Assembly: GCF_001194135.2 (NCBI RefSeq)
Contig: NC_068998.1
Span: 19,752,207 to 19,797,280 of the forward strand
DNA length: 45,074 nt
Reading direction: 5' to 3'
Source: Octopus bimaculoides
Taxonomy: Eukaryota
The position numbers and the translations under genes are program-made. A model generated the notes under the pieces. It was not told where the DNA came from and did no database searches. It worked only from the letters and a program-made list of their open reading frames with translations. Of the stretch, positions 24,121-24,221 are shown one piece after another; positions within the stretch are counted from its first letter, which is position 1; each line of letters starts with the position of its first letter.

Positions 24121-24221
24121 CCAATCCTGAGGGGGTTGGAAACGGATGGAATCACTTCGTAAAGCCATTTACAGAGAGTTTCCTGAAGCCAGAGTAATGG
24201 ATACTGTTAGCAAGAAACGGG
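24121..24221 (+). CDS. Copy 2 Sec-containing exon: (C)QS-U-GGWKRMESLRKAIYREFPEARVMDTVSKKR(G); TGA at 24128-24130
   Basis: Acceptor tgtcttttag, donor G|gtatga, 101 nt. Joins phase 2 and phase 1 neighbours without frameshift (270 nt = 90 codons over three exons). CxxU motif plus SECIS downstream. Confidence 0.9.

What the first reader, a model, noticed from the sequence alone, without database searches (positions are those of the whole stretch)
24121..24221. Copy 2: in-frame TGA in C-Q-S-U-G-G-W reads as selenocysteine
Seen: the Cys codon is split across an intron (TG|C) and TGA lies three codons later, exactly at the Rdx CxxU redox position. The frame is open on both sides. The ORF track starts only at the Met after the TGA (24146) and runs into the intron. 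The motif continues UGGW rather than the more usual UG[YF], and copy 3 shares this.
Basis: partly seen in the sequence, partly recalled or inferred. Interest (0 to 1): 0.8.

Follow-up and report, generated by a model that had tools for sequence, protein, structure and literature searches.

The report
Octopus MIEN1/SelW2-like selenocysteine codon
The in-frame TGA at 24128-24130 is almost certainly a real selenocysteine codon in one of three neighbouring octopus genes of the known SELENOW2/MIEN1 redox-protein family, which public annotation has cut short at the next methionine; a correct call, but an ordinary one.

Summary
Exon 1 (21983-22074) ends in TG before a GTGAGT donor. Exon 2 (24121-24221) supplies the C of the Cys codon, and TGA follows at 24128-24130, giving ...LRVEIEY-C-Q-S-U-G-G-W-K-R-M. 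With that codon read through, the protein matches Pfam Rdx (48.9 bits) and human MIEN1 (PDB 2LJK, E=1.8e-7). The TGA aligns with the second Cys of MIEN1's CxxC.

The TGA is kept in:
- the Octopus sinensis orthologue, where exon 2 is 100/101 identical;
- the divergent paralogue copy 3, here and in O. vulgaris;
- a copy-1-type mRNA of a related species;
- distant homologues, one with its own SECIS.

Each of the three copies has a SECIS-shaped hairpin downstream on its own strand. The three are homologous, and their substitutions preserve pairing. All score below Rfam's threshold (19.6-29.6 against 35 bits).

Sec-containing SELENOW2/MIEN1 genes are already described in fish and invertebrates, so this is a new member of a known kind. 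NCBI's 78-residue "MIEN1-like" model starts after the TGA.

Not shown: any transcript of copy 2, that the SECIS lies on the same mRNA, or Sec insertion itself. Copy 2's last coding exon lies in an assembly gap.

The parts
21983..22074 (+). Copy 2, coding exon 1: MSENRSSSSTIDDTEKSSVSQKHLRVEIEY plus TG, the first two bases of the split Cys codon. Donor GTGAGT at 22075.
   Evidence: O. sinensis has the same ...KHLRVEIEY+TG|GTGAGT, with an expanded in-frame 24-nt repeat upstream.
24121..24221 (+). Copy 2, exon 2 (101 nt): C of the Cys codon, then Q-S-U-GGWKRMESLRKAIYREFPEARVMDTVSKKR plus the first base of a Gly codon.
   Evidence: It is 100/101 identical to O. sinensis, and the single change is synonymous.
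24128..24130 (+). In-frame TGA, read as the proposed Sec codon (CQSU).
   Evidence: It aligns with the second Cys of CEPC in human MIEN1 2LJK, and with verified TGA codons in homologues.
24683..24759 (+). Copy 2, exon 3 (77 nt): (G)AFEVSINGNLFFSHLESCCYPDSDK. Acceptor tag at 24680-24682, donor GTCAGT at 24760.
   Evidence: Against O. sinensis there are 8/78 nucleotide differences, affecting six nonsynonymous codons.
27091..27779 (.). Assembly gap (N run) where copy 2's last coding exon is expected. In O. sinensis that exon encodes VVALLHDVQDGKKPPVVERSNSRCTIL*.
   Evidence: The exon was not found in the window. In O. sinensis it lies between the blocks that flank this gap. N runs are listed.
30636..30725 (+). 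Copy 2 SECIS-like hairpin: ATGA 30659-30662, 10-bp helix 2, apical AAA 30675-30677, 3' GA 30696-30697, and an 18-bp interrupted helix 1.
   Evidence: (SECIS_1 19.6 bits, gathering score 35).
30753..30771 (+). Two ATTAAA hexamers about 30-45 nt after the SECIS stem. This is where the block conserved among the three copies ends. Inferred poly(A) signal.
   Evidence: Sequence. The conserved block is shown. Function is inferred only.
5535..5611 (+). Copy 1, exon 3: (A)AFEITINDKLVFSRLQSFSFPSSEQ.
8465..8548 (+). Copy 1, last coding exon: IVNLLHDVQAGKTIPVIEESSSGCIIQ*, which ends in a CaaX-type motif.
9477..9567 (+). Copy 1 SECIS-like hairpin (ATGA 9500-9503).
   Evidence: and 47 (SECIS_1 29.1 bits).
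44549..44649 (-). Copy 3, exon 2 (101 nt): (C)-D-A-U-GGWNKMNSLRKDIQNEFPEAKVVDIISKTF, with TGA at 44642-44640.
   Evidence: O. vulgaris keeps DA*GGW.
42150..42226 (-). Copy 3, exon 3: (G)AFEVSVNGQFIHSRLESGSNAVHEQ.
39835..39900 (-). Copy 3, last coding exon: ILCILRDAKAGKPIPVISKDE*. It has no CaaX motif.
   Evidence: The O. vulgaris protein P0003 also ends ...ISKKE.
37655..37745 (-). Copy 3 SECIS-like hairpin (ATGA 37722-37719).
   Evidence: and 48 (SECIS_1 29.6 bits).

Best explanation
The window comes from an Octopus genome. It carries three neighbouring paralogues of a small thioredoxin-fold (Rdx) protein of the SELENOW2/MIEN1 branch. Copy 2 has four coding exons, and the TGA at 24128-24130 in exon 2 is a selenocysteine codon.

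Inferred from established eukaryotic Sec biology: the SECIS hairpin in the 3'UTR (30636-30725) recruits SBP2, eEFSec and Sec-tRNA[Ser]Sec, so the ribosome inserts Sec at the UGA instead of terminating. The product is a roughly 117-residue protein with a CQSU redox centre at the end of strand beta-1 and the start of helix alpha-1. By analogy with the O. sinensis orthologue (CTIL) and human MIEN1 (CVIL), it probably has a C-terminal prenylation motif that anchors it to membranes.

Shown here: the gene structure, family membership, alignment of TGA to the Cys/Sec column, conservation of the TGA in the orthologue and paralogue, and the presence and conservation of a SECIS-shaped hairpin behind each copy.

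Inferred, not shown: that the SECIS lies on the same mRNA, that copy 2 is expressed, that Sec is actually inserted, and the C-terminus of copy 2 in this genome.
For: Family and position of the TGA
- With TGA read through, copy 2 matches Pfam Rdx at 48.9 bits (cut-off 22.6), residues 25-89, so the match spans the TGA. Copy 3 scores 38.9 bits.
- The best solved relative is human MIEN1 (2LJK, E=1.8e-7), aligned as EYCQS[U]G over EYCEPCG. SelW (2NPB) is far weaker, at E=0.86.

Conservation of the TGA
- O. sinensis locus L001 is about 92% identical to the window overall. Exon 2 is 100/101 identical, TGA included, and the TG|GTGAGT donor of exon 1 is kept.
- Copy 3 is only 61% identical in protein over exon 2, yet keeps the split Cys codon, the TGA and GGW. 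O. vulgaris copy 3 keeps them too.
- A copy-1-type polyadenylated mRNA, assembled from many sequencing runs of a related species, reads ...VHIEYCNS*GYQDL... without interruption.
- Distant homologues listed with W at this column have TGA in their DNA (L008 CGA*GY, L009 CSG*GY). L008 also has a SECIS_1 match of 32.2 bits about 180 nt after its stop codon. Alignment A3 puts all of these in one column, over Cys in human MIEN1.

SECIS
- My pattern scan (ATGA / 9-13 nt / AA / GA, helix 2 and helix 1) found one strong site downstream of each copy, on that copy's strand.
- A strict version of that pattern gave 0 sites in 40 Markov-1 simulations.
- In five SECIS sequences from two species, 96.4% of cells pair, against 31-58% when the partners are slid. 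Two pairs change on both sides.
- All four window-versus-O. sinensis differences in the copy 2 SECIS lie outside the counted pairs (one 5' of helix 1, two in loops) or convert A-U to G-U.

Literature
- Sec-containing SELENOW2 and MIEN1 genes, invertebrate ones included, are described in PMC3316567 and PMC13134290.
Against: - None of the three SECIS candidates reaches Rfam's gathering score of 35. Copy 2 is the weakest, at 19.6 bits and E=0.19 in a 241-nt search.
- No transcript or readthrough protein of copy 2 turned up in the protein collection. The only hit is the truncated O. sinensis model.
- Copy 2's last coding exon is not in the window, because it falls in an assembly gap.
- Exon 3 of copy 2 differs from O. 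sinensis at 8/78 nt, affecting six nonsynonymous codons. That looks like relaxed or diversifying selection on this part.
- The two Octopus species are only about 8% diverged, so orthologue conservation of a single codon is weak evidence by itself.
- The three SECIS elements are paralogous, not independent. With five sequences the covariation score is reached by 32 of 500 shuffles.
- In the relative's full-length mRNA (L011-L013), Rfam found no SECIS at E<=1. I found only a weak candidate by eye near the poly(A) end.
Confidence: 0.85

Rival explanations
1. Copy 2 descends from a selenoprotein gene but is no longer functional, or is barely expressed, in this species. On this view it is a decaying tandem duplicate. 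The TGA and SECIS are inherited relics, not an actively decoded Sec codon.
For: - Exon 3 shows six nonsynonymous codon changes against one synonymous, relative to O. sinensis.
- Copy 2 has the weakest SECIS score of the three, 19.6 bits.
- No copy 2 transcript-derived protein was found.
- Exon 4 is unseen in this assembly.
Against: - Exon 2 is 100/101 identical between species, where neighbouring introns are 82-92% identical. About 8 changes would be expected and 1 was seen, and it is synonymous.
- All splice sites are intact, and there is no frameshift or additional stop in either species.
- O. sinensis keeps an intact exon 4 with a CaaX motif.
- Differences in the SECIS lie outside the pairs or preserve pairing.
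- All exon 3 replacements are conservative: V/I, N/K, F/V, D/E, D/E, K/T.
Confidence: 0.1
2. The TGA is an ordinary stop, and the real product starts at Met 24146, as in the NCBI model 'migration and invasion enhancer 1-like' (78 aa). On this view exon 1 and the first 25 nt of exon 2 are 5'UTR or a short upstream ORF.
For: Automatic annotations of O. sinensis and O. vulgaris start at this Met. A Met follows the TGA within five codons in both copy 2 and copy 3.
Against: - Such a product would lack strand beta-1 and the CxxC/CxxU redox centre that define the Rdx fold.
- The Pfam and MIEN1 alignments begin upstream, at LRVEIEYC, and run through the TGA.
- Exon 1 ends in the family's conserved (V/I)xYC strand, in the right frame, in three species.
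- A conserved SECIS would have no reason to exist.
- The same truncation is a known annotation artefact for selenoproteins (PMC13134290 and PMC12822975 abstracts).
Confidence: 0.03
3. The UGA is recoded by some other route, for example A-to-I editing of UGA to UGG (Trp), which is plausible in principle because coleoid cephalopods edit mRNA heavily, or near-cognate readthrough. That would give a CxxW protein instead of CxxU.
For: None from the sequence. This rests only on general knowledge that cephalopods edit extensively. The 'W' at this column in database homologues only reflects gene callers reading TGA as Trp.
Against: - The column is Cys in Cys-type homologues and TGA in the rest, which is the signature of Sec/Cys exchange.
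- A conserved SECIS accompanies every copy.
- Trp would abolish the redox centre.
Confidence: 0.02

Closest known systems
SELENOW2 / Sec-containing MIEN1 of fishes and invertebrates (Rdx family; Mariotti et al. 2012, PMC3316567; BMC Genomics 2026, PMC13134290)
   Same: - Small Rdx-fold protein with a CxxU motif directly after strand beta-1.
- UGA decoded through a 3'UTR SECIS.
- C-terminal CaaX in most members seen here, including 'Selenoprotein W, 2a' of Salmo trutta, which ends PPCVIL.
- A tendency to lineage-specific tandem duplication, as with zebrafish SelW2a/b in tandem.
- Invertebrate members are reported to fall in the SELENOW2 clade.
   Different: - The motif continues U-G-G-W in copies 2 and 3, instead of U-G-Y or U-G-F.
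- Octopus has three tandem copies.
- Copy 3 has lost the CaaX end, in this genome and in O. vulgaris.
- Copy 2 has a variable Ser-rich N-terminal extension.
- I did not build a phylogeny, so placement within the SELENOW2/MIEN1 group is by similarity only.
Human MIEN1 (C17orf37, Rdx12; PDB 2LJK)
   Same: It is the best solved relative (E=1.8e-7). It shares the EYCxxCG / AFEIxINGxLVFSKLE core, and the CaaX end (CVIL) resembles CTIL in the O. sinensis orthologue and CIIQ in copy 1.
   Different: MIEN1 has Cys, not Sec, so it needs neither UGA recoding nor a SECIS. According to PMC13134290, MIEN1 proper arose within jawed vertebrates, so the octopus genes are not its orthologues in the strict sense.
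Selenoprotein W (SELENOW1; PDB 2NPB)
   Same: Same Rdx fold, with CxxU at the same position followed by G and an aromatic residue. The spacing from U to the conserved (F/Y)P is the same, 17 residues.
   Different: The similarity is much weaker (E=0.86). SELENOW1 has no CaaX end.

Membership tests
Eukaryotic selenoprotein gene (UGA-Sec plus SECIS) | An in-frame UGA at a position occupied by Sec or Cys in homologues, with coding conservation on both sides | tested here: met
   TGA aligns with Cys in MIEN1 2LJK and with verified TGA codons in L002, L008 and L009. The CxxUGGW flanks are conserved in the paralogue and the orthologues.
Eukaryotic selenoprotein gene (UGA-Sec plus SECIS) | A SECIS hairpin downstream on the same strand: AUGA/GA kink-turn core, a helix 2 of about 9-13 bp, unpaired AA in the apical loop, and a helix 1 | tested here: met
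   All these features are present at 30636-30725, and also at 9477-9567 and 37745-37655. 96.4% of cells pair, against 31-58% in slid controls. The strict pattern occurred 0 times in 40 simulations.
Eukaryotic selenoprotein gene (UGA-Sec plus SECIS) | A score at or above Rfam's curated SECIS_1 threshold (35 bits) | tested here: inconclusive
   Scores were 19.6 bits (copy 2), 29.1 (copy 1) and 29.6 (copy 3), all below threshold, and the gathering-threshold scan returned nothing. In each narrow search SECIS_1 was the only cis-regulatory family matched, and its alignment used the full model. SECISearch3 was not available.
Eukaryotic selenoprotein gene (UGA-Sec plus SECIS) | The UGA and the SECIS lie on the same mature mRNA | not testable with these tools
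   No transcript of copy 2 was retrievable. The SECIS lies 5.9 kb downstream of exon 3, across two assembly gaps.
Eukaryotic selenoprotein gene (UGA-Sec plus SECIS) | Selenium is actually incorporated at the UGA | not testable with these tools
   This needs 75Se labelling, mass spectrometry or ribosome profiling.
Rdx family (Pfam PF10262) | A profile match above the curated cut-off that includes the N-terminal CxxC/CxxU motif | tested here: met
   48.9 bits against a cut-off of 22.6, with profile positions 1-66 of 74 matched to residues 25-89 of the readthrough protein. Copy 3 scores 38.9 bits.
SELENOW2/MIEN1 branch of Rdx | Closer to MIEN1/SELENOW2 than to SELENOW1, SELENOT or SELENOH | tested here: met
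   E=1.8e-7 for MIEN1 against 0.86 for SelW in the PDB search. Named relatives among the HMMER hits are 'Selenoprotein W, 2a' and 'MIEN1-like'. No phylogeny was built.
SELENOW2/MIEN1 branch of Rdx | A C-terminal CaaX prenylation motif | tested here: inconclusive
   For copy 2 in this window the exon lies in a gap, though its O. sinensis orthologue ends CTIL. Copy 1 ends CIIQ. Copy 3 lacks the motif and ends ISKDE.

The most novel reading that the evidence does not exclude
Octopods may have expanded a prenylated selenoprotein into a small tandem family and remodelled its active site from CxxUG(Y/F) to CxxUGGW. One member (copy 3) has lost its membrane anchor. Together with the fast-evolving beta-sheet exon, this would point to neofunctionalisation into membrane-bound and soluble redox proteins with a changed substrate pocket. 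More speculatively, the Sec codon in a heavy A-to-I editor could be switched between Sec (UGA) and Trp (UGG).
Probability: 0.06. Interest if true: 0.6.

Novelty: new member of a known kind. Interest (0 to 1): 0.3.

Why it matters
The value is mainly in annotation. The public octopus models for these genes start after the Sec codon, so they lack the catalytic CxxU centre and the first beta-strand. These are O. sinensis 'MIEN1-like' (78 aa) and O. vulgaris 'hypothetical / SelT/SelW/SelH family' (72 aa). Correcting them adds at least two, and probably three, selenoproteins to cephalopod selenoproteomes, for which I found no dedicated description in the searched literature.

The finding also shows that the CaaX-anchored, Sec-containing form of this family is widespread outside vertebrates. 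It gives a natural trio for studying what the prenyl anchor and the residues next to Sec contribute: UGY in a related species' copy-1-type mRNA against UGGW in copies 2 and 3, and with or without CaaX.

It does not change what is known about the recoding mechanism.

Tried and rejected
- Whole-window Rfam scans found no SECIS. The gathering scan returned nothing, and the E<=10 scan returned only microsatellite-driven pseudo-miRNA hits such as mir-297. SECIS_1 appeared only in narrow searches.
- I looked for copy 1's exons 1-2 in the window with regular expressions and with tblastn, using copies 2 and 3, human MIEN1 and the relative's N-terminus. They are not present. They lie either in the gap at 3691-3790 or before the window starts.
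- I looked for copy 2's exon 4 and did not find it. The open frame at 30492-30617 just upstream of the SECIS, and the reading that starts at the conserved TAG|TCAAG, were both considered as a last coding exon. I rejected them because the frames differ between copies through 2- and 3-nt indels and two of them run into the SECIS.
- Two word-index protein searches returned only P0001, so they gave no transcript evidence for copy 2.
- The relative's mRNA contigs gave no Rfam SECIS at E<=1. The GATTATGAAAAT near their end is followed directly by the poly(A) tail, so it is not a SECIS. A weak SECIS-like fold at L011 2250-2320 folds no better than shuffled sequence (z = 0.01).
- The fourth site from my SECIS pattern scan, at 35331, is at chance level: the loose pattern gives 1.35 sites per simulated window.

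Full report
**What is at the coordinates**

The window is AT-rich eukaryotic DNA with assembly gaps and many interspersed repeats. After the acceptor ttttag at 24115-24120, the sequence from 24121 reads C|CAA TCC TGA GGG GGT TGG AAA CGG ATG GAA... and continues to a GT donor at 24222. In this phase the 101-nt exon is open except for the TGA at 24128-24130.

**Gene model of copy 2**

- I searched upstream for ORFs ending in TG|GT(A/G). The only convincing first exon has ATG at 21983, 30 codons (MSENRSSSSTIDDTEKSSVSQKHLRVEIEY), TG at 22073-22074, and the donor GTGAGT. The Cys codon is therefore split TG|C, and the protein reads ...LRVEIEY-C-Q-S-U-G-G-W-K-R-M-E-S-L...
- Exon 3 is 24683-24759, encoding (G)AFEVSINGNLFFSHLESCCYPDSDK, with the donor GTCAGT.
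- The last coding exon is not in the window. In the O. sinensis locus it encodes VVALLHDVQDGKKPPVVERSNSRCTIL*. It sits between blocks that flank the N run at 27091-27779 in the window.

**Three copies**

- Copy 1 is on the plus strand. Exon 3 is 5535-5611. The last exon, 8465-8548, ends ...SSSGCIIQ*. Its exons 1-2 are absent from the window.
- Copy 3 is on the minus strand.
  - Exon 2 is 44649-44549 and reads (TG)|T GAT GCC TGA GGT GGA TGG, i.e. C-D-A-U-G-G-W. Its phase and 101-nt length match copy 2.
  - Exon 3 is 42226-42150, also 77 nt as in copy 2.
  - The last exon, 39900-39835, ends ...VISKDE* without a CaaX motif.
  - Its exon 1 lies beyond the window end. In O. vulgaris it is about 7.6 kb upstream and ends ...ELYVVIEY+TG|GTAAGT.

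**What protein it is**

With the TGA replaced by Cys for searching, copy 2 matches Pfam Rdx (PF10262) at 48.9 bits against a cut-off of 22.6. The match covers residues 25-89, so it spans the TGA. Copy 3 scores 38.9 bits. Among solved structures the best match is human MIEN1/C17orf37 (2LJK, E=1.8e-7). There, eycqsCg aligns with EYCEPCG, which places the TGA on the second Cys of the CxxC motif. Mouse SelW (2NPB) matches only at E=0.86.

The only close database protein is 'migration and invasion enhancer 1-like [Octopus sinensis]', 78 aa. It begins at the Met after the TGA and is therefore a truncated model.

**Is the TGA conserved?**

- **Orthologue.** O. sinensis locus L001 is about 92% identical to the window. 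Exon 2 is 100/101 identical, with one synonymous CGG/CGT change, and the TGA is retained. Neighbouring introns are 82-92% identical.
- **Paralogue.** Copy 3 is 61% identical in protein over exon 2 and its introns do not align with copy 2's. It still keeps the split Cys, the TGA and GGW. Its O. vulgaris orthologue does too (DA*GGWKEMNTLRK).
- **Copy-1-type mRNA in a related species.** Contigs assembled from many sequencing runs carry an uninterrupted ORF, MSDEGPPCGSSTGLNVHIEYCNS*GYQDL...SSCVIL*. The longer contigs end in a poly(A) tail. A spliced, polyadenylated mRNA with the in-frame TGA therefore exists for this gene family in a relative.
- **Distant homologues.**
  - An exhaustive HMMER search with P0001 found 28 proteins.
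  - Many of them start just after the Sec column, or show 'W' there (CGGWGY, CGAWGY, CSGWGY).
  - In the DNA that W is TGA (L008, L009).
  - L008 also has a SECIS_1 match of 32.2 bits about 180 nt after its stop codon.
  - Nearly all end in CaaX. One is named 'Selenoprotein W, 2a' of Salmo trutta.
  - Alignment A3 puts the octopus TGAs, these TGAs and the human Cys in one column.

**SECIS**

- The proposed element folds as a long interrupted helix 1, an internal loop with AUGA (30659-30662), a 10-bp helix 2, an apical loop starting AAA (30675-30677), and GA (30696-30697) on the 3' side.
- My pattern scan of both strands found the same architecture once behind each copy, on that copy's strand, with ATGA at 9500, 30659 and 37722. 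It also found one weak extra site, at 35331.
- In 40 Markov-1 simulations the loose pattern occurs 1.35 times per window. The strict version met by the three copies never occurs.
- The three elements lie in a block of about 250 nt that is the only alignable non-coding sequence shared by the copies. The block ends just after conserved ATTAAA hexamers.
- In five sequences (three copies here, two in O. sinensis), 96.4% of cells pair against 31-58% with slid partners. Two pairs change on both sides, for example U-A to G-U in helix 2.
- With so few related sequences the shuffle control is not striking: 32 of 500 shuffles reach the observed score.
- Rfam SECIS_1 matches all three with the full model, but below the gathering score of 35: 19.6 bits for copy 2, 29.1 for copy 1 and 29.6 for copy 3. 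Whole-window scans missed them.

**Mechanism**

Shown here: gene structure, family, TGA position and conservation, and the SECIS-shaped hairpin.

Inferred from established knowledge of eukaryotic Sec decoding (SBP2, eEFSec and tRNA[Ser]Sec acting on a 3'UTR SECIS): the UGA is read as Sec. This gives a CQSU redox centre at the beta-1/alpha-1 junction of a thioredoxin-like fold.

Inferred from the O. sinensis orthologue (CTIL), from copy 1 (CIIQ) and from human MIEN1 (CVIL): the protein is probably prenylated at its C-terminus.

**Caveats**

- No transcript of copy 2 was found.
- Continuity of the mRNA from exon 2 to the SECIS is not shown.
- Exon 4 is missing from this assembly.
- Exon 3 of copy 2 differs from O. 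sinensis at 8/78 nt, affecting six nonsynonymous codons. Part of the protein is therefore evolving at about the neutral rate, and a weakly constrained duplicate cannot be excluded. I give that about 10%.
- The contrast with the invariant exon 2, the intact splice sites, and the pair-preserving SECIS changes all argue for function.

**Comparison with what is known**

Mariotti et al. 2012 describe SelW2 as a Sec protein of fish, frog and shark, with Rdx12 (MIEN1) as its Cys homologue, and note tandem SelW2a/b in zebrafish. The 2026 vertebrate selenoproteome paper recovers SELENOW2 and MIEN1 as sister clades, places all invertebrate genes on the SELENOW2 branch, and reports Sec-containing MIEN1 copies in fishes. 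The octopus genes are therefore new members of a known selenoprotein family. I found no paper describing cephalopod selenoproteomes.

The points specific to octopus are:
- three tandem copies;
- UGGW instead of UG(Y/F) in copies 2 and 3, where the relative's copy-1-type mRNA has UGY;
- loss of the CaaX motif in copy 3, conserved between two species.

**Verdict**

Novelty is low, so interest is modest. The main practical consequence is correcting the truncated public gene models.

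Noticed in passing
window 39835-39900 (-): Copy 3 ends ...VISKDE* and lacks the CaaX motif present in copy 1 (CIIQ) and in the O. sinensis copy 2 (CTIL). The O. vulgaris copy 3 protein also ends ...ISKKE, so the loss is conserved. This suggests a soluble paralogue alongside prenylated ones.
   Followed up: partly
window 24683-24759 vs L001 10336-10413: Exon 3 of copy 2 has 8/78 nucleotide differences from O. sinensis, affecting six nonsynonymous codons. Exon 2 has only 1/101, and it is synonymous. Constraint is strikingly uneven within one small gene.
   Followed up: partly
L001 3663-3874 vs window 21983-22074: Exon 1 of O. sinensis copy 2 carries an in-frame expansion of a 24-nt unit (roughly KSSVSQTE repeated) that is present once in the window. 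The N-terminal extension before the Rdx domain is therefore variable in length.
   Followed up: no
window 1-5534, gap 3691-3790: Copy 1 has exon 3, exon 4 and a SECIS in the window but no exons 1-2. A retroelement-like insertion with a weak PHD-finger match (ORF 4146-4547) and an N gap lie upstream of exon 3, where those exons would be expected.
   Followed up: partly
window 568-1719 (+): A 383-aa open reading frame, rich in Lys, Arg and Ser, has no Pfam match above threshold (only Cdc6_C at 18 bits). It may be a transposon-derived gene or an unannotated gene.
   Followed up: partly
window 42773-43237 (+): An ORF with the HTH_48 domain of Mos1/mariner transposases (29.4 bits) lies on the opposite strand within the intron between exons 2 and 3 of copy 3.
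   Followed up: partly
window 11187-11587, 12584-13000, 13872-14269 (-), 23561-23980 and others: An interspersed repeat of about 400 bp, 80-90% identical between copies, occurs many times, including in intron 1 of copy 2. RT-like fragments recur at about 4.1-5.0 kb, 22.3-22.95 kb, 24.85-25.3 kb and 34.0-34.7 kb.
   Followed up: no
P0004, P0009, P0010, P0016, P0031 (database proteins); L002, L008, L009: Several homologues in the protein collection show Trp at the Sec column because the gene caller read TGA as W. P0004 even runs on past its CaaX end through a second TGA. This is a systematic artefact and could be used to find selenoproteins in metatranscriptomes.
   Followed up: yes
window 30753-30771, 9590-9610, about 37625-37610 (-): ATTAAA or AATAAA-like hexamers are conserved about 30-45 nt after each SECIS, just where inter-copy conservation ends. 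They are probably poly(A) signals, which would put the SECIS at the very 3' end of the mRNA.
   Followed up: no
window 27780-28160, 29800-30150, 40240-40530, 44000-44130: (TG/TA)n microsatellites give spurious sub-threshold matches to mir-297, mir-3149 and similar models. They also border the assembly gaps.
   Followed up: yes
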